A stretch of DNA of 63,933 bases, the filler included, from Reticulomyxa filosa (lineage: Eukaryota > Protista > Foraminifera), in NCBI GenBank assembly GCA_000512085.1. It is 21 parts of 21 records of this genome, joined end to end, with 100 filler letters (N's around TTAATTAATTAA, not from the genome) between each part and the next. Parts side by side here need not be neighbours in the genome. Positions count along the whole stretch, not along the records: positions 33,469 to 41,985 come from ASPP01014009.1; 20 more parts are not named here. The stretch is one strand, 5' to 3'. The notes below the pieces were generated by a model. The model worked only from the letters and a program-made list of their open reading frames with translations, made no database searches and was not told where the DNA came from. Below are positions 1-41,985 of the stretch, one piece after another (within the stretch, counting starts at the first letter, position 1; each line of letters opens with the position of its first letter). The translations under genes and the position numbers were made by a program.

Positions 1-878
1 GGCCTGGTTGCATCGAATTTTAGTTAAATTGAAAATTTATTTGTTTTTATTTTGTTTCTAAAGGTAGACAATTAATTTCATTAGATTTCTTATTTAAACG
101 TATTTTACAAGAAAAAATATGCTAGGCTTTTTTTGTATAAACAAGTAAAGCATAAAAGTTAGAACAATGTATATAAAATAGCATACGAAATGGACATAGA
201 AGAAATACTGAAATTTAAGTATACTAAGCCCCTGGCAGAACTGATGAAGGTAATGAACCCAACAATGATACCATACCAAGCAATCCTAAAACGAATAAAA
301 CCGGGAGCAAACTCAAAAATATTTGCAACACTGGCAAAAGTGTTAACTAGGAACGCGAAGTTCAATTGGCAAACAAGGGGTGCACGAGGAACAACGGAAC
401 TGATGTTTAAAAAATGTATATGATGTAAATAACAATGGGACAACCAGTCCTTTTCAGTATATTTATATGATCTTATCAAAAGAGAATTTTATACAAATGA
501 GATTTGCTCGAGATAAAATATTGCTACATCGCCTTGCGGTAATTTGAATATTTGAAGAAATAGTTAAATAAGTAGTAGATACATTGAGCTAATATCTTTT
601 TCATCATTGGATACAAATAAAAATAATAAGTTTCCTTTTTTTTTGTACTATTTTCTAATGACTTGTAAAAGAGACTGGCATTAGCAATGATGCACGATAA
701 AATGTCAAAGTACATCCGATATTATCATAATTTTATATTTTCCAGTATTATTATAGCATTTACTATAAGCAATATAAAAATTACTTTTTAATTGGATATA
801 AATGGAGTTTCACAATTTTCAGATTCAATAAAGAATAAACTCCATTTTTTTAAATAATAACAATAAAAAAATACAAAG

Positions 879-1419
879 GTGCAATTAGTTGAGGAAATGA
901 ATCGACGATGCCAGTCGGTGGATAAGAATAGTAGCAACATCCAATTGCTTCCGGGGCAGTACTTGCGCATGTCGTTGGAGGGGACGATGTTACGCAGAGG
1001 CGCAAATGTTTCGCTTTGTGCCGCTAGACCCAAAGCAACAGCAGTACGTGTCCAAGCCATTGTCTGCGACCAACTACAAGGAGATACTGTTGCAAGTATT
1101 GAAGCCTATGTACAATTGATCCTCACAAGGCCTCGCATAACATCCAATTGTTTCTAGTTTATGTGCGTGCTATTTCCAATATGTTGTTTTTTTTGTATTT
1201 TCAGACCAACAAATATATATACATATATATGTATGTATACGTGTATATGTAATGCAATAGACTACATCACTTGTTTCTATCGCCGTTCCATTCGTCTGTA
1301 CTTCGTGTGAGCGATTTGTTCAATCATTAGATGTTCAATATCATAGTGGACATGATACATTCTGGTTTAGCCCTGTGTACGGGACTATCATTCGCTTACA
1401 AACTCCCAATGAAAGCTGA
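879..1419 (+). CDS. Hypothetical spliced protein fragment
   Basis: GC-elevated exon-like blocks (879-~1109 VQLVEEMNRR..., 1261-1419 TTSLVSIAVPFVC...LQTPNES*) separated by a (TA)n-rich intron-like segment ending in TAG at 1260. No recognisable domain. Confidence 0.35.
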
Positions 1420-2020
1420 AACACCAAAGTGAAACGATCAAAATCAACACACATGCCATACTGAAAGATTGTTTTTGGTTTTTTGTTGTGACGTTTGCCT
1501 TTTATTCACTTATTTACCTATTCACAACTCGTTTCTATCGTAATACAGTTCAATCATGCATTTTCTTAGATTGTTTAGGCATCCAATAAATATGTACAAC
1601 TTTATATCATTTGTTGACCAAATTATCAAAATCTCGTCATCGGCATGATCATAATGTTCTTTGTGAATCATGAATTATACATTATGAATTATGAATTATG
1701 AATCATGAATTAAAGTTTTTAATTTATGGCTCATTTGTGAATTATGCATTATGGAATTTTCCACTGTCATTGATGTAATATTTCGACTGACAGCACAATA
1801 TAATAAACTATTCTTTGTTATTGCCTTTTTTAAACCATATAGACTTATTCCTAATAAAAATGTTGCACTTTCTTCCAATAACACAGCAATATATATTATA
1901 AATTGTACATCCCCATCAGAGTGGTCATTGCCTTTCAAATAAAATTAGAAAAATTATTAACAACTTGAAAAAAAGTGTTATACGTAAAAATTTGTACGTA
2001 AAAAGAATAAAAAAAACGAA

Positions 2021-2120
2021 NNNNNNNNNNNNNNNNNNNNNNNNNNNNNNNNNNNNNNNNNNNNTTAATTAATTAANNNNNNNNNNNNNNNNNNNNNNNN
2101 NNNNNNNNNNNNNNNNNNNN
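2021..2120. other. Artificial contig linker N44-TTAATTAATTAA-N44 (first of 20)
   Basis: Identical 100-nt block with stops in all six frames. Copies start at 2021, 3245, 9338, 16144, 21248, 23365, 26752, 30326, 33369, 41986, 44745, 45845, 47626, 48729, 50256, 52412, 53845, 59408, 61580 and 62832. Confidence 0.98.
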
Positions 2121-2123
2121 GTT

Positions 2124-2161
<38 letters not shown>

Positions 2162-2169
2162 AACAAAAC

Positions 2170-3244
2170 AGAGTCTTTGGAATTAAAAAGGAGATAAGCT
2201 TCGATCGCAAAGGTAATCCAAACGACATCATCGTGTTTGATAGAGCTTTTCCATTGGCTATCATCGACGAGCCACTTTTCAAAGCACTGACGCGTGAGCT
2301 TGTGAAAGCGTTCGAGAACGAGTTCTCTTTCACATGACTGCATCTGATTCCACCAAAGAATCCACTTTGAACGTCCCTGCACATCAGAATTAGAATTAGA
2401 ATTAGAATTAGAATTAGAAAGAGAAAGCTGTTCTTGTTTTCGCTCCTCTTTGTCGATTTTGAGTGGAAGAGCAGTCCAGCATTGCAAAGGCGTTTTGAAA
2501 TGGATGGCCATGGGACGATGATCGTCATTCATGCCTCCGAGGATGTGGATGGACGAGTGATCGGGAGGGGACAGCACAGCGACGCCTCCGCAGAAGGGAG
2601 AAGGCAAGGTGTGCCTGGACTTGGTCCACGTGTCGTTGGCAATGGAATAGCAATGGATGGCATCGGTCTTCTTCTTAGTGGCTAGGTTGCATCCGCCAAA
2701 GAATAAAATATGGCCATCGATACATTCAAAGGCATAATATTTGAGCGGGGCAATGTCATTACATACATTCAATTGTTTGTAAGTAAACGTTTGCGTTTGC
2801 TCATCGAATCGAATGCAAAGTCCCGTTTGCAAACAAAATAACACCATGATATCACATTGACCTTCGATTGGTCTTTTCACCAGACAATGATAACCCAATC
2901 CATATTCATGCGGCTTCATTGGCAATCTCTCATTCATTATCGTTGTCACAAATTCCATTTTGCTCAAATCAAACACATCCATGTTCTTTGGAAAACGACT
3001 GATAAATAACAAATTATCATCCTTCCCACCGATCACTGCACGCACTCCTTTGTAGCTGTGCTCGTCTTTACTTATCACAATCTTCTTATTATTACTGTCT
3101 GTCAAATCTATCCATTCATTCCATGCATGTTCGCCTTTGCTCTCATTCTTCCACACGCTTGCATATTTCAACACCAATGTATGACTGAAACATCCTCCAA
3201 ATGATATCAATGTACATTCACCTCCTTTGCTATTGCTATTGCTA
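2170..3244 (-). CDS. Kelch-like beta-propeller protein, lineage-expanded family (partial)
   Basis: ORF 2065..3210 has SFGG..HTLVLKY, VRAVIGG, YHCLV, ILFFGG..DAIHCYSIANDTW and IHILGG (GG...Y...W Kelch pattern). An (SN)n linker and a C-terminal KWILWWN...FEKWL...W module follow. Confidence 0.8.
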
Positions 3245-30880: not shown

Positions 30881-33525
30881 AAAAAATAAAGTAATAAAAA
30901 AAAGAAATGTAATAATAAATAAAAAAAAGGGGAAGAAAAAAAATGGAATAATAAAAAAGAAAAAAAAAGGTTATAGAAAAGAAAAAAGTAAAAAATAAAA
31001 AAAAGTTAATGATGAAAAAGATAAAGAAAAAAAAAGAATAAGAAAAGGAAGAAAATTATATTTTAATTTTTTAATTTTATATTATAAAAATTGATTATCC
31101 TGCGCGGGATAACAAGTTAAGTATTTTTTTTTCTTTTTTTTTTTAAATATCAATGTGAAAATAAACTTATGACATTATAGAAATCAAAGACGAAGATGGG
31201 ACCAATGATTTCAGATTCAAGATCAATGGCAATTGTACTGATGGGATTCAACAAAGCAACTAGAATGTGGAGCAAAATAGAATTGATAATATTGAATGAA
31301 CCAAATTCTTCATTGGCGAAGGACATGATCAACAATTTATTATTTCAATTCGATATTCATTTATTAATTTGACAGTTCGATTGGCGAGGATATTGAAGTG
31401 GAGTACAAGAAGTGGGCAATGCAAGTGATCAATAGCACGACGCAGCTAACAACGTAAATATTTATATGTGTTCAATACAGCCGCTGTTTTAGTGTCTCCA
31501 ACTTTATCACAAACGTGGATCTGGATATGTTAGGTACATAAACACACACACAACAGTCGTTTGATTGTATCTTCTATAGACATATATGCAATCAATATAC
31601 AGGATTTCAAAATAGAAATAATTCGCTTTGTACAGTCTCCCGAAAGATATTCTCAACATACCAGATTTTCATGGTACATACACGTATTTAAAAAAAATTA
31701 ACGGCCACCAGTGATGACAACTGCATCTTCCAACCACACGGCCCAAAGAATTTATCTAGACATGCGGATGTCAAACAAAGTTGTTAATGTAAACAACAAC
31801 TTGCAATTCCAGGTCATTGTTAATGCGATTTCAATTCTTTTGCGCCAACGGCTTTGTTGCAAGTATTTGGGCATAATCTTCGAATTTGTCCAATGAGTTA
31901 GTACGTTGTCTTCAAGTCGAACAAGTGTACCATGTCATCAATATTTCGTGCTTAAGAATTGAAGTTGACTCCAAGACTCAATATCGAAACCATACAAGAC
32001 CAAGTTCCGCATATCCAAATATCACAGTCAAAATGAGAAAAAAGGTAAATCGTCGGACTAAGTATGTACTTTTTCTTTCTTGAATAATACCCAGTTGGTG
32101 CGTCCTGTGAAAATAGGTTTGAAACAATAAAAAATATCAAGCAAGTGAAAGCGTGTATATTATTAACAAGTTGCACAGAGCATAGTCTTCATATAACATA
32201 TATTAATTGTTGACTATGTCTTGGATGAATAGTCAGTGTTTGAATGATGAATAGACGCATTGAACGTCTTACCGTCGGCTGCAGATAATATTGGCACTAT
32301 TTGTGAGCAATCCGACCCCATTCGACAATACGCTGCTTACATTCACTCATCTCCAAATTGTATTGATGTATACAGTCAATATTGAAGATGTCCAGTTAAT
32401 ATATTAACACGGCCAGCAAACGAGTAAATTGGGATCATGATCAGCAGCCTTGGAATAGACTACACGAAATGATCATTTTGCGTCCAAGAGGCAACTTGAA
32501 ATTGCATTTCCAGTTTCAAGATATTGTCCATATCACCACCAAAAATTACAAAAACAATATAAATTAAGTATATGGGCATATGCAGCGTAATTTATATTAT
32601 CCAGCTTGGTATTTCCTTGGTCTATCGCAATCAAAACTTAAAAGTATATTGTTTGTGTAAGTGCACAAACCAATAAACATAATATATGCAGTCCAGGAAA
32701 GATAACTTCATCATAGCTTTGACGAGTGTAAGTGTGATCGACAAAGAAAAGATGATGAGTTCAAGTAAATTCATATTTTGTGGAGAATTCCTCATGGTAC
32801 GTAATCCTGCCATTGCCCGAATCCAAGACAGAAAATGCATCAATAAATTCCAGAACAATAAAAAAAAAGGCATACAAAAGGACAAACCTCAAACCAAGTA
32901 CGAAGGACAGCAGCTTTATCTGACGGTATATGTTATTTTTATCATATTTTCAGTTGTTGTGAGATATCTTAACTAAAACCATGTGAACATGTATTTTTTA
33001 ATTGTAGAACGACCTACTTTAGGTTTAGAATGAAAAAAAGGAGAAGATGATGAAAAAGAAAAGAAAGAAGCAAACGTGTGGTATATGAATTATGCCAAGA
33101 ACTACGACAGCTGACAATGAAGCGCGAAAGAAGTATTAGCATATCGAGAGACGCGAGCAGATAACGATGATCGCCACAATAAATCAGTTTCATCAAGACT
33201 TTAATTGCTGTCGTAAGATTGTAAACGCAAAGAACTTCATTGTCGACCGTGTTTCTTTCATTGCATATCATACAAGGTCACTCAAATTAACACGCAATAT
33301 TTTTAATCAATTTACTCCAACTAGTCAATGCGCATGATTGGTCGAATATTTGTCGCTTTTTTTTTTTTNNNNNNNNNNNNNNNNNNNNNNNNNNNNNNNN
33401 NNNNNNNNNNNNTTAATTAATTAANNNNNNNNNNNNNNNNNNNNNNNNNNNNNNNNNNNNNNNNNNNNAAAAAAAAAAAAAAAAATAAAAAAAAAAAAAA
33501 AAAGGAAAGTAAAGAAATAAATCAA

Positions 33526-35865
33526 GTGAATCGCGATGATGTGTTTTTCTTGGCAAGTCATATCTCCAAAAGCAATGTGACGGAGAAGCTCATCGCGTGG
33601 AAACTCGTCGAACAATGCTTTTATAAACTACGAAACCGAAGCGACGGTCTCACGCGAGAGCTTATCATTGACACGTGTAAAAAACTTTATGAATTGTACC
33701 AATTGGATTTGTGCTTTGTGCAAATGCATTGGGAAGCGATTCAAATGCATGTCAGCAGAGCGATTCAAATGCAACGAGAGCGCAAGGGCAGATATTTTTG
33801 GAGCAAGAGCGCCGATGCAGAAGAAGAAGAAGAAGAAGAAGAAGAAGAAGAAGAAAGAAGAAGAAGATAATGATGACGACGATGATGATGATGATAAAAA
33901 AAGACCTTCTCCTGCGCTTGATGCGTTTTTCGAAGATATAAAGACTCTATGCAACGACGAGAAAGACAAGGAAAGTGAAAAGGGGTCTGACTCACCTTCT
34001 TTATATCTTTCTGATGTTGGAGGCGATCGTCAAAGTTATAAATCCGAAGGTTAGTGGTTATTTACCATCGAGAAATAAAACACGATATAATAAAGCTATC
34101 ATAATAATATGTGCATATATGTGTATATGTGTGTGTGTGTGAAGGATCTCAGAAGGGTGAATCCGAAAAGAACGAACAAAAGTAACTCGCTTAGCAAGTA
34201 TAGCAGTCCATCCATGGACTCGGTTCGTCGAATGAAGGAGACAGCGGCGTCGGAATACCAAGACGATCCAAGTAGTCGAGATTCTGCCCGCTTGAGCTCA
34301 CTGAGCAGCAACATGAGCAGTAACATGAGCAGTAACATGAGCAACAGTTGCAGTGAGGAACAGACCAACACAAAAGAGCTAGATGTCGTAGGCACTATCG
34401 TCGCTTGTCTCATTGAAAACTCCTTTGTAAAAAAGTGGTTCACCGTCTCCAAATTTTACTCCATTCTTTCCAAGTCGTATCTGCCTTCCGCTTGTCCGAT
34501 CGATCTCCACTCTTGTGAAACCGCCTTCCAAACAGCGAACCACCCACTTCCGATGTTAAAAAGTTTCATCACAAAATTCACCCTTCTAATCCGGCTGAAA
34601 ACTGTTACTATTATTGCTGGCCGCTTAAAAAGTGTCCCATTTGCAAAAAAAGTTGGGTCTTATATACATGCATACATACATACATACATACATACATACA
34701 TACATGTATATAAGTACATAAATATAATATTGTTGTCTTTGTGGACGAAAAAGAGGAACCTAAGGAAATGAATCCAAACAGTGACAATGAGCAATTGACA
34801 GAGACCAATTTTCAGCCAGTGGACGAGATCAAGGAACGTCCATCCAAAAAAACAACCTCCATCATGCCCTGCGTGAGTGCGCCTGTTCGCAGTGTGTATA
34901 CCAAGCACAACGACGCTATGATGTACATGATGCGCTACGTGGTCGAAAACGAGTTCTTGGATCGATGGTTCAAAGCCGCGGACTTTCATCTTTCATGACA
35001 ACCAAAGCCTCAGAACAACGAACCTTGGACTGCAACAGCAGTAGTCTGATCGAGTGCAAGAAGCTCATGGACACGTGCAAGCACGCCAACACCGACGTTC
35101 CGATGTTCCACAAGTATGCCCCCGATCAAATTAAAAAAGTCTTCTTTACTACTATTGCTCCCCCGTTGCAAATTGTTCCATTTGCAAACGTTAGGCAAAA
35201 AAAAAAAATAAATGCATAAATAAATAAATATATACATATATACATATATACGTATACATATATATGCATATATGTATATGTACATATACATATATATATA
35301 TATACATTGTATAGAACAATGCCAAAAAAAGTCGGACAAAAGGTCACATTTAATAAGATCAAACATTATGCACCGATCCCAAGTTATGAAGACAGCGATG
35401 GCAAAACGGGGAATAAACGACCTCACAACAAGAAGGTGCCCAGGCCAGTACTTACTCATTGAAACCTGCGATTCGAAACATGCGATACACGATTGCGAGC
35501 ACCGTCGAGTTAATAGCAACGAGCCATTTCCAGGACAGGTGGTTCACGGCTTCGGATTTCCATGCCATCTTTTCCGAATGGCATCAACGCCACCGCGTTT
35601 CGGACTGTCCTACTTTTGCTGAAACTTGCGGTGTTCTCATTTGCATGTCCAAGTATCCACAGACCACTATCCTCATGTTCCATAGCAAAAAACCATCAGC
35701 TTCGGAGCATATCAAGTTTTATCTTTGCTGGCCTGTACTCAGCTGCACGTACTGTCTTACAGATAAAAAAGATTACGACGTGGAAAGGTTTAAAGTAAGG
35801 CTGAAAAACAAACCTTTGTTGCAGGAACATGAGCCATCAGGCAAGAAGTACATAAATACTTTTTG

Positions 35866-35896
<31 letters not shown>

Positions 35897-36007
35897 ATTT
35901 TTTTTTTTTTTCAAATTACGTACATAGAACATTCCAACGCTGAGGATAACGGTGACAGTAATAGTATGGCTGCGTGTCGGACTGAAAAAAGAATCACAGG
36001 TCGCTGA
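33526..36007 (+). CDS. Multi-exon protein with acidic tract and three copies of an unrecognised ~90-aa His/Cys domain (5' truncated)
   Basis: Copies at ~34382-34651, ~34912-35189 and ~35492-35756 share ENxF..[RK]WF...F...C...[HY]P...FH...YxCxPxxxCxxC once three homopolymer frameshifts are corrected. Confidence 0.7.
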
Positions 36008-37084
36008 TTGGAGAAGTAGAAGGGCGGGAGCATAGAATCATAGGACAACCGGGCCAGAGTTACTCAAAAAAAAAAAAAAAAAAAAAAAAATTGTTTTCAT
36101 TTCTTTAATACATAAAGTCTGGTTTTTAAAAATAATTTGATTAGTTCGGCTTTGCATCCTTTTTGTTGTGTGTCTTTTTTTCGAGTTAGTGGTGGCCAAA
36201 TATCTCTATCTTTTTTTAATACTTTTTGTGATAGCCATCTTTTTTTTCATTTTCCCAACTCTTCTCTGTTTTATCAATTTTCATTTATGTCCGAATTCCA
36301 CAATGTACTGTTTTGTCTGCTTTCATCAACAGCAATGTAAAGTAACAAAAAAAAGAATGCTAATAAAGCGTCAATAGTCTGTTAGATATCTAATATCAAG
36401 CGAGTCCCAACGATGGCAAATGCTCGAAACAACATCACAAAGAACAAAAAAAAGAAAGAAGGAATTCTGCGCCAATGCTATAAAAATCTGATGTGGTATG
36501 TCGTAAATAGCGAATTTGCGTTTGCTTTTTTTTGGGAATATTTGTTATATGATTATTTTGTTTACTTAAGAGAAAAAATTTTCAAAAGTTTACTTAGTGA
36601 GGATCTGACATTGCGATTAGTTGATGTTCAAATTTTTTCTTTTTCCAAAAGCGTTTAATACAATTTTTTGAATTGAATCGGTTTTGATTAAAATAAAGTT
36701 TAGTTCTGCACTAACCGAGAATCAAGAGTAGCAGCGGAAAGAATATAGCGGATATATACTCTTGCTAAACACGATATCAGCCACTCTGATTGGATTCTTG
36801 TATATCACTCACTACACAAGATATCAGTATACAATTTTTATACGTTTTTGATTTGTTTCACGTTTTATTCGTTTACATTGAAAGTTTTAATTTTAATTGT
36901 TAAAATCTGACTCTAGTATTATTGCTTTTTTTTGATTAATGTTTGGTTTTTCGAGCAATTTTGAATGGAAAGTAAATGTTGTGAATAAGAAATTGAATTA
37001 GCCAATACTCAAAAAAGTAGAGGTTCAAATAAAAAAGGGGAATAAAAATTGTTTAAAAGACCAAGATTTATTTGTAAGTACATA

Positions 37085-38306
37085 ATGCAGTGGTTGAAGA
37101 ATTCTCAAACTAGGTTTCAAAATGAGGTCGTGTGTGTCAAACCCAACAACATTGAGAGCATAGCACGACAGTTGGTAAGTTACACTTTAACTTTTGTTAC
37201 AACAAAACACAAATATGCTTTGTTGAATGTCTGGGCTAATTAATAAAAAAAAAACAGACAGAAAAACAAATGCAAACTATTATCCAACATTGGCTTCGAA
37301 TTTTATATGTGAGGTTGGGATGGATCCATAATTTTGACACAATTGTACTCAAATACGTTAAGTTATCACGTAAAGAAATATTCACCCTGTAATGTGAGTC
37401 ATCAACATCATCTAAACACAGGCTAAATTTTTCCAACTGCTTAAAGTTTTGCGAGGGCACAGTGGTCCAGTACGAAGTGTAAGATTTTCATTTGATGGCT
37501 GCAGGGTTATTTCAGGGTCAGATGATCACACAGTTCGAATATGGGATATTGCATCAGGACAACAAATTCAAATATTCCACACACCCAATTCGTTGAGCGG
37601 CATTGCAAAATTTTCCCCTGATGGGAATATCATCGCGTTATATTCATGGAACATAACAAATCAATTTTTGGATGTGAAAACAGGAAAAGAAGTGAGGTTA
37701 TTAAACGGAAATTTTGGGCGAGCGTACGCAATGGACTTTTCTCCAGACGGCAAAAATATTGCCATAGGTCTGCATGATGGTGTGGTACAATTATGGAATG
37801 TAAAGAATGGAAAAGAGATTATATCATCGTATAGTCATTCTGAAAGTGTACGGGATGTAAACTTTTCATCAGATAATAAAATGCTTGTGTCATGTTCGGA
37901 TGACACAACAATTAGCGTATTGGATGTAAAGTCATGTAAAATATTGATAAAATTGAAAGGGCATTCTCATTCAGTGCTAAGTGTAAAATTTTCTCCGGAT
38001 AACAAATTTGTGGTATCTTGTTCTTTGGATAAAACAATTCGAATATGGAATTTACAATCAGGAGACGAAGTAATGCAATTTGAAGGGCATTCATATGAGG
38101 TGAAGGACGTAAAATATTTTCCAGATGGTAAAATAGTTGCATCTTGTTCGGCTGACAAGACGCTTCGATTGTGGGATGTGACGTTAGGGTGTGAAATAGA
38201 CATGTTAGTAGGGCATGCTTCTTACGTGAATAGCTTGGATATTTCGCCAAGTGGGTATACAATTGTGTCATGTTCTTCTGACAATACTATAAGAATATGG
38301 ACATGA
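37085..38306 (+). CDS. WD40-repeat protein (about 7 blades), lineage-expanded family
   Basis: Exons 37085-37174, 37258-37356 and 37422-38306. N-terminal IIQHWLRILYVRLGWIHNFD module, then repeated GH...V..V.FS.DG..I.S.S.D.TIRIWD. Confidence 0.92.
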
Positions 38307-38770
38307 AGATACCCACACAAATATACAAAAGATCGTTTCTTTGTTGAACAAAACTTTGTAATAAAAAAAAGTATCACTTTTGATTGCTAGTTTTAATTAA
38401 TAACTTTTTTGTGGATTTACATTCAGTTAAAAAAAAGATTCTCTGAAACAGTTAAATCCGCGAAGCAAGAGAGTATATATTGATTGTTTAGGAAACAATT
38501 TTCTTGTTTTTAAACAAACTACAAATTTTCCTCAAAAAATTGGTGAATGGACAGCAAATAAAAAGCAGAAGATAGCATCACGAAAGTGTTTAAGAAAATT
38601 GGTACAAGAAAAGGTGTTCACAATAAATTGAAATTAACAACAGAGTTTAGACGGCCATATGAAGCGTCACAATAACCAAAAAACAGTACTACACGGAGCC
38701 CAACTATCCGTTTCGAACCACACACAAACAAAACTTCCTTTTATTTTTTTAAAATTGCTTTACGATAACT

Positions 38771-41174
38771 CTAGAAAAGCAAAAAAAAAAAAGAGAGAGG
38801 GACAAACCTTTTTTCATGGCATTGATGACAAATTTCGAAGTTGCATGGTTTACATGTAAACATGACGGTATCCTTAGGGAGATCGACGGAATTACAACTA
38901 TCGCACATTCCATAGGCGCAATAAAGGATACGAGTAAGTCGATGATGTCTTGGACAGGTGACTACATATGCAGTAGTGCCGCACAACAACAAATGCACAA
39001 AACAATGAGAAAAAAAAAAACAAAGTCATCTAAAGTGGGAGGAGAAAAAGTAGGAATAGAAATGAAAAGGACTTATAGAAAGAGTAGGCTCATCGAAGGC
39101 GAGGCTCTTTATCTCGGAGTTGGCTGAAAGTGGAGGCTTGGTAGCGCATTTTTCGCACAAATCGTAATTACACGTCCGACACCCCCAAACGTTTGATGTC
39201 GTCTTGTGACACCCATCACACTCGAACATGCCCATTAAATTTTTTAGTCCATGTTGTCCTGGGCAATTTCTTACTATTCATTTGTTTTTTTAATTTCCTC
39301 TTCTGTTTATTTATTTTTTTTAACAACAACAAATCCAAATAGACAAACATACAAATCTGAACAGGCCCCGATTCCGAAGACGCTTCCTTTGCATGATTGT
39401 CAGATTCCTCGTTGTTTGTTGATGTTTCATTCGAAGCGGAGTTGGTAGTCCCATTCTCTGAAATTATCAAATGTACGAACATGCATATTATATACGTAAA
39501 ATATATATACATATATATGTATATATATGTATATATATTATGTGTATATGTATATTTACACATCCATTGTAAAGAGAAAGCAACTGTGATCATGTTTTAT
39601 GAGTTTGCGTTGGATAATGAATTTGAGAACAGGATAGCTTTGAAAGTCGTTTGTGACAACGAAGATGGAGGGATGAGTGATATCGTCCACCATCGACTCG
39701 TACTCGCGATTGCGATGTTTGCTCTGTTTGGACGGCGGTCGCACATAGTCGCGTTTGCCGATTGTCGATTCCCCACATATCACCCTGCAGTACAACAGTT
39801 CCGCCTGTCCATTCGCCCCATCAAACGCCGCGTAGTCTTTGTAAATCGGATACGACGCGTCTCTCGCAAAATACACTCCTTTGCCATACATATGCGTTTT
39901 ATTGTAATCTCGAAGAAACCCCTTTGTATTATATGCATATATATATATATGTATACGTATATGTTTATATGTATATAAGTTTGTTTTTTTTTTTAGTGAC
40001 TCCATTTATTTAACAACAACAATAAAAAAAAAAAGCCACTCCAAAATAGGAAAAAAGATAAAGAAGTAACCGTTCGACAGATGATATCGACAGTGGCGAC
40101 ATTGGTGCCATGCCAAAGGAATTGCACGTTGAGATTGTCTTTGGTCAGACGTTTGTGTGCGAGCCAGTTGTTTTCCAAGCTTTGATGGTGCGACCAAATC
40201 TCCGAGTTTTGGATCTGATACACGTCTACAATCTCGTACTTGTCACGGTCCACTGTCGCGTAAAACGCTTGCACTGCTTGTCCCACCGATGCATCTTCGC
40301 TCATGCTCATCTTCACGTAGATGTCATTCTCATGCTCGTTGTGGTTGTTCCGCCACCATTCGGGCCCTTTCATTTTACACCATTGTTAACAGTGCAAACA
40401 ACAACCCATTTGAACTTTTTTTTTCTCAAAAAAAAAAAAAAAGGGTCTTTTTTTTTTATAAGTTAAACTTTTTTCATCCTCGTTGTCCACTTTTGTAATA
40501 ATCGCATTTTTGTTGGAGCGTTGGTTCCAACACGACTCACATATGGCCCAATTACACAAGCTGTTGTTATAACCATCCCCCCCCCCCAATTTTTAAGTTT
40601 GATATAGTCAAATCTTTGCAAAAAGGAAAATTAAGACACCTGCAGCTGAAGACCAATGAATTATCTGTCAATGCATTCGCACAGAGTTTACAACATTGAT
40701 CTTGGAACTTCTTTTTTGTTGGATTCAAAGTGTGATGGTTCGAACATGTTGCATTCGTTTCTGTTAATAACTTGTTTGAGGATTCCGTTTTTTGTAGCTC
40801 TTTCTTTTTTTTTTTTTTTTGAAAACAAAAAACATGTAATATGAAATTAATATAGTCGCGTGTTACAGAGGGAGAGGAGGGGAAAAAAAAAAACAAATGC
40901 TTAGACTTGAATTTGCTCTTTTTTTATTTGGACTAGGGAGAGATTGCCCTCTTTCTCTTTGCTCCTCGAATGCATTTTTAGGCTCATCGTTTGGTGAATA
41001 ACATTTGGCACAGCAGCTCCAGTCACATAGCTGGCACCCATACATTACATTTGCTGCCCCTGCCACTGTGACACACAAGTCACAGAGCACACCCTTTCGA
41101 GTTGTTGTAAACTTTGTCAGACCATGCTTTTGTGGACAATTTACGCCATTTTGATCACTCTCGACTATGAACAT
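38771..41174 (-). CDS. PARP-family ADP-ribosyltransferase (mono-ART type) flanked by four Cys/His-rich C1/ZZ-like modules
   Basis: Catalytic motifs QIQN..IW, FLWHGT, GF...YGKGVYFARDASY, LLYCRVICG and YESMVDDITHPSIFVV..DFQSYP. Two C-x3-H...CxxC...CxxC[DN][WYF]xxCxxC modules lie on each side. The exact 3' end is uncertain. Confidence 0.88.
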
Positions 41175-41341
41175 GGCCGTTTTGTATTTTTATTCGTGAA
41201 AATAAATTGATAATTTTTTTTAGGGGACTCTGAAACTCAAAAAAAACTAACACTGTACCTCTAAGAGGAATATCTTATCTGATAGGTGCGAAAAGGTATA
41301 TTTTACATATTGTGATCCATTTTAGAATCTCTAAAAGACAA

Positions 41342-41985
41342 CTAACGTATGAGGCAATATCTGTTGCAAACTAGACATTGCTGAATCGGAAAACAATAAA
41401 AGTAGTAAACATTTATAACACGCCCATTAGTTTTCTTTTTTCTGTGAAACATTTTGAATTTGGAGTTGGGATGTCTGGCAGTGCGCATAATTCTTTCACA
41501 AAAAGGCAAATCTTTTGGAAAATCAGAAGACACTCGATCTAAATATAATTTGGAAAATACAGCATAAAATTCAGATGGAGTGAACCATCTCTTATTAAAT
41601 TCATTTTCAATAATGCAAGCTATCATATCCACGACTGTATCTTGTTTCTTTGCTTCTGTCTTTTCATCTTCACTGCTTTGCGAATCATGACGAGGTGGGT
41701 CTAACACAATTGACTGTTTTTGAGGTTTTGGGCCACGCGTAGGAACTTCTGTTGATCCATGATGTGGAGGAGTTGTACTTTTTTTTGAGTCGTTGTAAGA
41801 TGATTCTATTCATGAATTATTTAACACGAAACAATAGAAGATATTACTAGTAATAAAATTCTTTATATTTGTCATTGTTGTGGCAATTACAGATAGGCAA
41901 ATAATAAAACGTACTTTTAAGTTTAGTCTTTTCATTGCTGTCTTCGTCAATGGGAGAAGAAGAAGAAGAAGAAGAAGAAGAAGAA
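41342..41985 (-). CDS. Protein ending in a fourth copy of the unrecognised His/Cys domain (5' truncated)
   Basis: VVDMIACIIENEFNKRWFTPSEFYAVFSK...PFCERIMRTARHPNSKFKMFHRK...YYFYCFPIQQCLVC. Confidence 0.7.

What the first reader, a model, noticed from the sequence alone, without database searches (positions are those of the whole stretch)
34382..35756. Unrecognised ~90-aa domain with a His+Cys3 tail, repeated three times and partly hidden by frameshifts
Seen: three segments of one gene share a pattern. A: VACLIENSFVKKWFTVSKFY..HSCE..NHP[+1 at 34543]TSDVKKFHHK..CYYYCWPLKKCPIC. B: MRYVVENEFLDRWFKAADFH[+1 at ~34992]..IECK..HANTDVPMFHK..FF[+1 at 35145]YYYCSPVANCSIC. C: VELIATSHFQDRWFTASDFH..ETCG..YPQTTILMFHSK..FYLCWPVLSCTYC. 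Invariant positions are F-x3-WF, a later F, a mid Cys, FH and C-x-P-x3-C-x2-C. The Cys tails of A and B are missing from the ORF track and appear only after one base is added to each homopolymer. Inference: a helical module followed by an H-C-C-C zinc site. It may bind nucleic acid and may be a foraminiferan-specific domain family. I do not recognise it as a named domain.
Basis: partly seen in the sequence, partly recalled or inferred. Interest (0 to 1): 0.8.

Follow-up and report, generated by a model that had tools for sequence, protein, structure and literature searches.

The report
Foraminiferan zinc-type winged-helix domain repeats
The three repeats are real copies of an unnamed ~93-residue winged-helix domain with an invariant His plus three Cys, found only in the foraminiferan Reticulomyxa filosa and a few environmental relatives as the tail of OAS-like proteins; two of the three copies are interrupted by single-base frame breaks of unresolved cause.

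Summary
Observation confirmed. The piece is a Reticulomyxa filosa contig. It also finds a fourth, intact copy D on the minus strand (1e-46). The next best hit is E 0.5.

Pfam and PDB sequence searches find nothing. An exhaustive profile search of 1.84 billion proteins gives only 7 representatives, all R. filosa or unassigned JGI contigs. An AlphaFold model (pLDDT 85.5) is a winged helix-turn-helix and matches only generic winged-helix structures.

W-F, F-H and C-x-P-x3-C-x2-C are invariant in 14 distinct copies. The "mid Cys" is not. Zinc binding is plausible but untested, because no coordinates were available.

Relatives share one architecture: OAS-like N-domain, then an "EQCFY" domain, a linker, and 1-3 copies of this domain. 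In the window each copy sits on its own exon between putative phase-1 introns.

The gene has at least four frame breaks supported by homology on both sides, and probably six or seven. No reads were available. A draft-assembly artefact and a young pseudogene are about equally likely.

The parts
33520..33855 (+). First exon, frame 1: the 'EQCFY' helical domain shared by the family (up to the conserved Y-x-W)
   Evidence: tblastn with P0004, P0023 and P0019 gives E 1e-15 to 1e-31. Alignment A5. No Pfam or PDB relative.
33826..33880 (+). Frame break (frame 1 to 2, one extra base) inside the (GAA)n/acidic run
   Evidence: The conserved Y-F-W is in frame 1 and the conserved P-S-P-A-L-D-A-F motif is in frame 2. 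Both align to the same relatives.
33881..34049 (+). Rest of first exon, frame 2 (PSPAL motif, acidic/Ser linker), ending in phase 1 before GTTAGT
   Evidence: The same phase-1 exon end is seen in paralogue locus L001.
34050..34144 (+). Putative intron 1 (GT..AG, with a TG/TATG microsatellite). The frame after the only usable acceptor (frame 1) does not fit the head of copy A (frame 2), so another break lies between about 34140 and 34185.
   Evidence: Read from the sequence, with comparison to L001 and P0004. Inference.
34373..34543 (+). Copy A, head (frame 2): helices 1-3 of the winged helix
   Evidence: External HMM positions 2-69, E 1e-11.
34543..34545 (+). Frame break in copy A: ccc run, one base short (frame 2 to 1), inside the Pro codon of the H-P motif
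34546..34650 (+). Copy A, tail (frame 1): wing with F-H, then C-x-P-x3-C-x2-C
   Evidence: External HMM positions 57-93, E 8e-7.
34652..34753 (+). Putative intron 2 (102 nt, GTTGGG..AG, phase 1, (ACAT)n inside), directly after CxxC-K-K. Splicing joins the tail frame of A to the head frame of B.
   Evidence: Read from the sequence. Its length fits the annotated R. filosa introns of 115-125 nt and the published mean of 87 nt (PMC13746701).
34915..34989 (+). Copy B, head (frame 1)
   Evidence: External HMM positions 2-27, E 1e-4.
34990..34993 (+). Frame break 1 in copy B: cttt, one base short (frame 1 to 0)
34992..35144 (+). Copy B, middle (frame 0), with helix 3 and F-H
   Evidence: External HMM positions 36-76, E 7e-4.
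35145..35147 (+). Frame break 2 in copy B: ttt run, one base short (frame 0 to 2)
35147..35188 (+). Copy B, tail (frame 2): Y-Y-Y-C-x-P-x3-C-x2-C
   Evidence: External HMM positions 80-93, E 3e-4.
35190..35314 (+). Putative intron 3 (125 nt, GTTAGG..AG, phase 1), at the same place after CxxC-K as intron 2. The linker that follows (35315-35460) needs one or two further frame changes to reach copy C.
   Evidence: Read from the sequence. Inference.
35483..35764 (+). Copy C, intact, inside ORF 35459-36007
   Evidence: External HMM positions 3-93, E 9e-19. Also.
41360..41644 (-). Copy D, intact. It is the last exon of a second family gene whose upstream exons lie beyond the contig end.
   Evidence: External HMM E 1e-46. 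85-90% identical to RFI_28299, RFI_02690 and RFI_07916. dN/dS 0.26-0.35 against these paralogues.

Best explanation
The repeats are three tandem copies of a lineage-restricted winged helix-turn-helix domain of about 93 residues. A fourth copy belongs to a second gene on the same contig.

The fold is H1, a short strand carrying the invariant W-F, H2, H3 and a beta-hairpin wing. Its C-terminal extension C-x-P-x3-C-x2-C packs back on the wing. The invariant His sits on the first wing strand (the F-H motif). The first Cys follows the second wing strand directly, and the last two Cys form a CxxC knuckle. Together they most likely hold one structural zinc ion that staples the tail to the wing (inferred).

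In R. filosa paralogues and in environmental relatives the domain is always the C-terminal module of one architecture (shown): an OAS-like nucleotidyltransferase-fold domain, a helical 'EQCFY' domain, a charged low-complexity linker, then one to three copies of this domain.

In the window the contig starts just before the EQCFY exon. Each copy, together with its linker, lies on its own exon flanked by phase-1 introns. That is the arrangement expected if the array grew by tandem exon duplication (inferred).

The most likely role is a ligand-reading module, nucleic acid first and protein second, for an OAS-like and possibly catalytically inactive sensor or adaptor (inferred, weak).

The window's three-copy gene carries at least four single-base frame breaks, probably six or seven, in short homopolymers or repeats. 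Either this end of a draft contig is badly called, or the gene is a very young pseudogene. I rate the two about equally.
For: Homology and significance of all pieces: (HMM from outside homologues only).

Fold: AlphaFold2 model of copy D, mean pLDDT 85.5, pTM 0.74, helices 2-13, 23-36 and 46-55, strands 66-73 and 76-83, tail pLDDT 85-87. Every structural neighbour is a winged helix:
- VIA-align Z 6-7.5: ORC/Cdc6 WH, Fur/Zur, PadR, Polycomblike WH, TFIIE, H1.
- Foldseek PDB best E 0.07: YceH, PadR, forkhead.
- Atlas TM 0.57-0.61: PadR, HARE-HTH.
- BFVD: wHTH proteins.

No named family: Pfam none, PDB sequence and profile none.

Invariant W-F, F-H and C-x-P-x3-C-x2-C in 14 non-identical copies that are 25-50% identical.

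Restricted range: 7 representatives among 1.84e9 proteins. Sources are R. filosa and JGI samples 3300030741, 3300030738 and 3300030627.

Architecture: P0009 (964 aa, one ORF, two copies), P0010 (two copies), P0020 RFI_00040, P0004 and P0023. The EQCFY domain is present in the window.

N-domain is OAS-like: ESM Atlas features score 0.96 with 197 shared features, and TM 0.64-0.66 over 282-291 residues to OAS and OASL clusters.

Purifying selection on D-like copies: dN/dS 0.22-0.44.

Intron sizes match annotated R. filosa introns. Exon B as assembled is 436 nt and needs two more bases to be a phase 1-1 exon. Exon A is 507 nt, which fits one extra and one missing base.
Against: - Zinc binding and the His/Cys geometry could not be checked, because the tools return no coordinates.
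- Structural matches are only middling (Z<8, Foldseek E>0.01). They show the fold class, not a family.
- Net charge of the copies runs from -4 to +7, so nucleic-acid binding is not a general prediction from charge.
- The OAS-like assignment rests on one source (Atlas). Pfam OAS1_C and NTP_transf_2 do not hit, and my own model of that domain was poor (pLDDT 46.8).
- The OAS-like part is not on this contig.
- The window's gene has no GenBank protein among the hits and has many frame breaks, so this particular gene may make no protein.
Confidence: 0.72

Rival explanations
1. The frame breaks are errors of the draft assembly, that is, mis-called homopolymer or repeat lengths at a thinly covered contig end. 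The real gene would then encode an intact protein with three complete domains.
For: - Every break is a single base in a homopolymer or (GAA)n run.
- Once frames are followed, there is no stop codon in any homologous segment.
- All family-invariant residues and the GT..AG phase-1 splice sites are kept.
- A and B score as well against the outside HMM (66 and 52 summed bits) as intact C (64 bits).
- A C10 run also breaks the neighbouring ZZ-PARP gene.
- The assembly is very fragmented, with N50 3.6 kb (PMC13746701).
- A JGI contig shows the same kind of break where sister contigs are intact.
Against: - The runs are only 3 bases long.
- Breaks go both ways: two extra bases and at least three missing.
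- Five other R. filosa loci, plus copies C and D, have no break in about 2 kb of the same domain. Three breaks in 560 nt is therefore a local excess (rough p about 0.01).
- No annotated protein covers this gene.
Confidence: 0.5
2. The frame breaks are real. The three-copy gene is a recently inactivated pseudogene of the family, while copy D and the paralogues are the working genes.
For: - At least four, and probably six or seven, breaks are concentrated in one gene of about 2 kb, while its relatives are clean.
- No gene model for it appears among the database hits.
- The family is multi-copy, with at least 8 loci, so loss of one member would be tolerated.
Against: With that many indels, neutral decay should also have produced several stop codons and hits on invariant residues. 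None is seen. Splice sites are still intact.
Confidence: 0.45
3. The His-Cys3 set does not bind zinc. It might hold an iron-sulfur cluster (3Cys-1His sites exist) or form disulfides, or the conserved residues might be needed only for packing.
For: Only conservation is shown. No geometry or metal data exist.
Against: - A CxxC knuckle plus two ligands from an adjacent hairpin is the usual layout of small structural zinc sites (general knowledge).
- The proteins have no signal peptide features, and their partner domains are cytosolic or nuclear in type (OAS-like).
- The model places the tail confidently (pLDDT about 85).
Confidence: 0.12
4. The similarity between the segments is chance, or reflects low-complexity sequence, and no real domain is present.
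For: None found.
Against: E-values come from a profile that contains no window sequence. The hits are collinear across frames. Intact homologues exist in other loci and samples. The fold prediction is confident. dN/dS is below 0.5.
Confidence: 0.01

Closest known systems
Generic winged helix-turn-helix domains (ORC/Cdc6 C-terminal WH, PadR, Fur/Zur DNA-binding domain, forkhead, Polycomblike WH, TFIIE-alpha extended WH)
   Same: Same topology of three helices plus a beta-hairpin wing. These are the only kinds of structure returned by four independent structure searches.
   Different: No sequence or profile similarity to any of them. Z is at most 7.5. The invariant F-H on the wing and the C-x-P-x3-C-x2-C tail are not features of those families as I know them (from memory, not tested).
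OASL, and DZF-domain proteins (NF90/ILF3, ZFR)
   Same: Architecture only: an OAS-type or DZF-type nucleotidyltransferase fold joined to tandem small ligand-binding modules. Relatives of the window gene carry an OAS-like N-domain. OASL and DZF clusters are among its nearest Atlas neighbours.
   Different: The C-terminal modules there are ubiquitin-like domains, dsRBDs or C2H2 fingers, not winged helices. The N-domain here does not reach Pfam OAS1_C or DZF. Its catalytic state was not tested. The canonical acidic pair appears to be missing, by eye only. The window contig does not contain this part.
Z-alpha domains of ZBP1/ADAR1 (tandem winged helices in innate immune sensors)
   Same: Tandem small winged helices attached to immune-type proteins. 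A viral Z-alpha-like protein (ASFV I73R) appears at Z 6.4.
   Different: No sequence similarity and no zinc site in Z-alpha (from memory). The match is no better than dozens of other WH domains, so this is only an analogy.
Eukaryotic OAS superfamily as surveyed by Culbertson and Levin 2023 (PMC10732462)
   Same: That survey reports OAS-like proteins in 8 of 12 eukaryotic supergroups, so an OAS-like protein in Rhizaria fits the known range.
   Different: That paper does not mention Reticulomyxa or Foraminifera. No paper held combines Reticulomyxa with oligoadenylate. The fusion to this domain was not found described.

Membership tests
Winged helix-turn-helix fold (superfamily level) | H1-(b1)-H2-H3-b2-wing-b3 topology | tested here: met
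   DSSP of the pLDDT 85.5 model: helices 2-13, 23-36 and 46-55; a bridge at residue 21; strands 66-73 and 76-83.
Winged helix-turn-helix fold (superfamily level) | Structural superposition on solved WH domains over most of the domain | tested here: met
   66-84 of 95 residues aligned at rmsd 2.1-4 A, Z 6-7.5. All of the top 50 are WH-containing chains. The scores are middling, so only the fold class is supported.
Any named WH family in Pfam (forkhead, RFX, PadR, Fur, HARE-HTH, Cdc6_C and others) | Profile match at or near the curated threshold | tested here: not met
   No Pfam family at E<=1 for copies C and D. The fragments of A and B gave only chance-level hits. A PDB profile search gave no hits at E<=10.
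Structural zinc site (His-Cys3) | Four ligand residues invariant across the family | tested here: met
   The His of F-H and the three Cys of C-x-P-x3-C-x2-C are invariant in 14 non-identical copies. Other Cys vary.
Structural zinc site (His-Cys3) | The four side chains converge in tetrahedral geometry | not testable with these tools
   Structure prediction returns no coordinates. From strand pairing (66-73 with 76-83), His67 and Cys84 should lie on the same face of the hairpin. This is inference only.
Structural zinc site (His-Cys3) | Bound metal | not testable with these tools
   Needs purified protein.
OAS / CD-NTase superfamily (N-terminal domain of relatives; not in the window) | Pfam OAS1_C, NTP_transf_2 or SMODS match | tested here: not met
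   No such hit at E<=1 for P0016, P0009, P0018 or the L001 product. The PDB profile search found nothing.
OAS / CD-NTase superfamily (N-terminal domain of relatives; not in the window) | OAS-type fold | tested here: met
   The Atlas's own model of P0018 (pTM 0.75) aligns to OAS, OASL and PAP clusters at TM 0.59-0.66 over 267-291 residues. Feature score 0.96 with 197 shared features. This is a single source. My own model was too poor to use.
OAS / CD-NTase superfamily (N-terminal domain of relatives; not in the window) | G-S ... [DE]-x-[DE] plus a third carboxylate (active site) | not tested
   The invariant G-x2-L-S-G ... S-x-G-Y-L stretch seems to lack the acidic pair. No reference OAS sequence was available from a tool for a proper alignment.

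The most novel reading that the evidence does not exclude
Reticulomyxid foraminifera possess their own family of OAS-like innate-immune-type sensors or adaptors. In these, one to three zinc-stapled winged-helix modules, a domain family not yet in any database, read the nucleic-acid (or other) ligand. The array grew by duplication of a phase 1-1 exon. This would be an independent protist solution to the 'NTase fold plus tandem reader domains' design seen in OASL, NF90/ZFR and ZBP1.
Probability: 0.25. Interest if true: 0.7.

Novelty: new variant of a known kind. Interest (0 to 1): 0.5.

Why it matters
This gives a sequence and fold definition for an unnamed domain family that no database currently covers.

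It ties about ten 'hypothetical proteins' of the only foraminiferan genome, plus unassigned soil-type contigs, into one architecture with an OAS-like domain. OAS-like proteins outside animals are almost unstudied functionally. A defined candidate ligand-reading module makes them testable through binding assays with copy C or D.

It also flags that several GenBank gene models of this family are wrong: split genes, read-through introns, and an 'intron' cut into the CxxC motif.

Finally, this contig end is either mis-called or holds a fresh pseudogene.

Tried and rejected
- Reads: the look-up of sequencing runs listed no run, so read laying could not be used. The cause of the frame breaks stays open.
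- Metagenome DNA: a scan for the A-break region with variable run length gave 0 matches. The search for related loci in metagenome contigs failed on alignment A2. With A7 it gave 101 pattern matches but no true relative.
- Reference paper: the R. filosa genome paper (doi 10.1016/j.cub.2013.11.027) is not held. The sequencing technology could not be verified. My recollection of 454 plus Illumina is unverified and was not used as evidence.
- RFX idea: my first guess from memory, that the domain is a divergent RFX-type DNA-binding domain, got no support from Pfam or PDB.
- EQCFY as a diverged copy of the same domain: hhalign probability 0.2%, rejected. EQCFY against PDB gave only chance-level mS29 hits.
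- N-domain model: AlphaFold model pLDDT 46.8, too poor for a fold search and not used.
- Copy D as the N-terminus of the downstream ZZ-PARP gene: rejected. In the paralogous loci L001, L002 and L003 the domain ends its gene and has other neighbours.
- Atlas feature search with the domain itself: scores 0.84, below the useful range.
Full report
**What the piece is.** The piece 33469-41985 is a contig of the naked foraminiferan Reticulomyxa filosa. The intact ORF at 41342-41707 (minus strand) is 85-90% identical to three R. filosa hypothetical proteins, RFI_28299, RFI_02690 and RFI_07916. Their loci lie in assembly GCA_000512085.1.

**The observation.**
- Copy A runs 34373-34543 in frame 2 and continues 34546-34650 in frame 1.
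- Copy B runs 34915-34989 (frame 1), 34992-35144 (frame 0) and 35147-35188 (frame 2).
- Copy C (35483-35764) is intact.
- A fourth copy, D, lies at 41360-41644 on the minus strand.
- The three breaks sit in ccc (34543-45), ttt (34991-93) and ttt (35145-47). Each is one base short.

A MAFFT alignment of the pieces with C, D and the three paralogues places every piece without conflict.

As an independent test I built an HMM from eight homologues that are not in the window. I searched it against all 481 stop-to-stop six-frame segments of the piece. Seven segments scored, and they were exactly the expected ones with collinear profile coordinates. The next segment had E 0.5.

| Segment | Profile positions | E-value |
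|---|---|---|
| D | 1-93 | 1e-46 |
| C | 3-93 | 9e-19 |
| A head | 2-69 | 1e-11 |
| A tail | 57-93 | 8e-7 |
| B head | 2-27 | 1e-4 |
| B middle | 36-76 | 7e-4 |
| B tail | 80-93 | 3e-4 |

**Is it a named domain?** It is not.
- Pfam gives nothing at E<=1 for C and D, and only chance-level hits for fragments.
- phmmer and a profile search against all PDB sequences give nothing.
- An exhaustive hmmsearch of the profile against 1.84 billion cluster representatives returned only seven proteins, all at E<=1e-16.
- Three of the seven are R. filosa proteins. Four come from JGI environmental contigs of three samples: 3300030741, 3300030738 and 3300030627.
- A further word-indexed profile search added RFI_40362 and one more JGI protein.
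- No other named organism appeared, so the family looks restricted to Reticulomyxa and close, unassigned relatives.
- The JGI contigs have similar G+C (32-34% against 28-37%).
- These contigs carry the whole protein as one ORF across positions where R. filosa genes have introns. That suggests they are transcript-derived, which is my inference.

**Fold.** AlphaFold2 on copy D with alignment A2 gave mean pLDDT 85.5 and pTM 0.74.
- Helices lie at 2-13, 23-36 and 46-55, with a one-residue bridge at 21.
- A beta hairpin spans 66-73 and 76-83.
- The tail is confidently placed, at pLDDT about 85-87.

This is the winged helix-turn-helix topology. Four structure searches agree and return essentially only winged-helix proteins:
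- VIA-align over 48,161 PDB representatives: Z 6-7.5 to ORC/Cdc6 WH, Fur/Zur, PadR, Polycomblike WH, TFIIE and histone H1.
- Foldseek against PDB: best E 0.07, to YceH, PadR and forkhead.
- ESM Atlas: TM 0.57-0.61, to PadR, HARE-HTH and DUF480.
- BFVD: wHTH proteins.

The scores are middling. They support the fold class but no family.

**Conserved residues.** In 14 non-identical copies (25-50% identity between subgroups) the invariant positions are W-F (the short strand after helix 1), F-H (first wing strand) and C-x-P-x3-C-x2-C (directly after the second wing strand).
- The other conserved Cys (D-C-P) is Phe in copy D and Arg in RFI_00040.
- From the hairpin register, His67 and Cys84 should face the same side. 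Cys90 and Cys93 form a CxxC knuckle.

A structural His-Cys3 zinc site that staples the tail to the wing is the simplest reading. I could not inspect coordinates, so the geometry is untested.

D-like paralogues show dN/dS of 0.22-0.44 over the domain, so it is under purifying selection.

**Architecture and context.** The relatives show what the domain belongs to.
- The JGI protein P0009 (964 aa, a single ORF) and R. filosa RFI_00040 (607 aa) have four parts in order: an N-terminal domain of about 340 residues, a helical domain with the motif E-Q-C-F-Y, a charged low-complexity linker, and one or two copies of the winged-helix-Cys domain.
- P0010 has two tandem copies. A multi-copy tail is therefore a natural state of the family and not an oddity of this window.
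- The window's gene begins with the EQCFY domain at 33520-33855 (tblastn E 1e-15 to 1e-31). The contig starts in the A-rich stretch just upstream, so any N-domain lies off the contig.
- The N-domain has no Pfam or PDB sequence hit, and my own model of it was poor (pLDDT 46.8).
- The ESM Atlas holds RFI_32555 letter for letter. Its features (0.96, 197 shared) and its own model (TM 0.59-0.66 over 267-291 residues) match 2'-5'-oligoadenylate synthetase, OASL, DZF and poly(A) polymerase clusters.
- I therefore call the N-domain OAS-like, on one line of evidence.
- The invariant G-x2-L-S-G...S-x-G-Y-L stretch seems to lack the usual acidic pair. That would make it a pseudo-enzyme like OASL, but this was judged by eye and not tested.
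- OAS-like proteins are reported in 8 of 12 eukaryotic supergroups (PMC10732462). That paper does not mention Reticulomyxa, and no held paper links Reticulomyxa with oligoadenylate.

**Gene structure in the window.** Directly after CxxC-K-K of copy A and after CxxC-K of copy B there is a GT in phase 1 (GTTGGG at 34652, GTTAGG at 35190).
- AG acceptors at 34752-53 and 35313-14 give introns of 102 and 125 nt. Both are filled with microsatellite sequence.
- Annotated introns in paralogous loci are 115-125 nt, and the published mean for the genome is 87 nt (PMC13746701).
- Splicing at 34651|34754 joins the frame of A's tail to the frame of B's head.
- In paralogue locus L001 a clean phase-1 intron joins the EQCFY exon to the domain exon in frame.
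- Each copy thus sits on a phase 1-1 exon, the arrangement that permits tandem exon duplication (inference).
- Exon B as assembled is 436 nt and needs two more bases to be divisible by three. This matches its two breaks.
- Exon A is 507 nt, already divisible by three. This fits one missing base at 34543 plus one extra base near 34147-34183, where the frame after the only usable acceptor (frame 1) has to change to frame 2.

**The frame breaks.** Four breaks are supported by homology on both sides.
- The first lies in the (GAA)n run. The conserved Y-F-W is in frame 1 and P-S-P-A-L-D in frame 2, and both align to the same relatives.
- The other three are the breaks in copies A and B.
- One more is needed near the start of exon A. 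One or two more are needed in the linker before copy C.

No sequencing run could be listed, so the cause cannot be settled here.

For an artefact:
- Every break is a single base in a run or repeat.
- No stop codon occurs in any homologous segment, and all invariant residues and splice sites are kept.
- A and B score as well against the outside HMM as intact C.
- A C10 run breaks the neighbouring ZZ-PARP gene.
- The assembly is highly fragmented.
- One JGI contig shows a similar break where sister contigs are intact.

For a real pseudogene:
- The runs are only three bases long, and the breaks go in both directions.
- Five other R. filosa loci, plus C and D, have none in about 2 kb of the same domain.
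- No database protein corresponds to this gene.

I rate the two at about 50:45.

**Function.** The following are shown:
- a conserved, selected, lineage-restricted winged-helix domain with an invariant His-Cys3 set;
- its position as a single or tandem C-terminal module of OAS-like proteins.

The following are inferred:
- Structural zinc (about 0.6).
- A ligand-reading role for the OAS-like protein. Nucleic acid is the first candidate (about 0.4), because this is what winged helices, basic wings (H-R-K-K-K in D-like copies) and OAS partners usually do.
- Against nucleic-acid binding as a general property, the net charge of copies ranges from -4 to +7. A protein-binding role (about 0.25) cannot be dismissed.

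**Verdict.** This is a real, previously unnamed domain family of a well-known fold, in a new architecture. The zinc site, the ligand and the nature of the frame breaks remain to be tested.

Noticed in passing
window 38771-41174 (minus strand): A multi-exon gene with ZZ-type zinc fingers and a PARP catalytic domain. The ZZ finger at 39029-39235 scores PF00569 26.6 bits, and further Cys-rich ZZ-like ORFs lie at 38771-38998, 40386-40589, 40567-40896 and 40863-41174. The PARP domain (PF00644) is split by an AT-rich intron into 39996-40373 and 39559-40005. The position of the catalytic Glu looks substituted, which would suggest a mono-ART type (by eye only).
   Followed up: partly
window 40578-40587: A C10 homopolymer lies where two overlapping minus-strand ORFs of the ZZ-PARP gene change frame (G-G-G-G in both). 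This is another homopolymer frame break on the same contig.
   Followed up: no
window 37449-38306 (+): An intact 285-residue WD40 ORF with six repeats (PF00400, E 2e-63). It lies between the two family genes, and its true start is unclear.
   Followed up: no
L001 (ASPP01006178) 631-3225: Upstream of the paralogous family gene, an 816-residue gene model has a weak PUB-domain hit (ORF 777-1226, E 3e-5) and a weak arginine ADP-ribosyltransferase hit (ORF 1720-3225, PF01129, E 3e-4). Together with the PARP gene in the window, ADP-ribosylation genes sit next to family members at two loci.
   Followed up: no
L001 3595-6417; L002 119-789; P0004, P0023: GenBank gene models of the family look wrong. 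L001 splits one gene into three models (429, 169 and 138 aa). P0004 and P0023 read through the intron after the EQCFY exon. P0002 removes an 'intron' that starts inside the CxxC motif, although the genomic ORF encodes the complete domain.
   Followed up: partly
L004 (JGI 3300030741, Ga0265459_10000930) 2965-3108: The second domain copy of this environmental contig is also split by a frame change at a Lys/A-run (profile 1-72 in the main ORF, 63-93 in another frame). Sister contigs (P0010, P0013) encode it intact.
   Followed up: partly
window 33520-33855; alignment A5: The 'EQCFY' domain, about 100 residues with invariant Y, I, C and W, is a second unnamed domain of the family. It has no Pfam or PDB relative and no detectable relation to the winged-helix-Cys domain (hhalign probability 0.2%).
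   Followed up: partly
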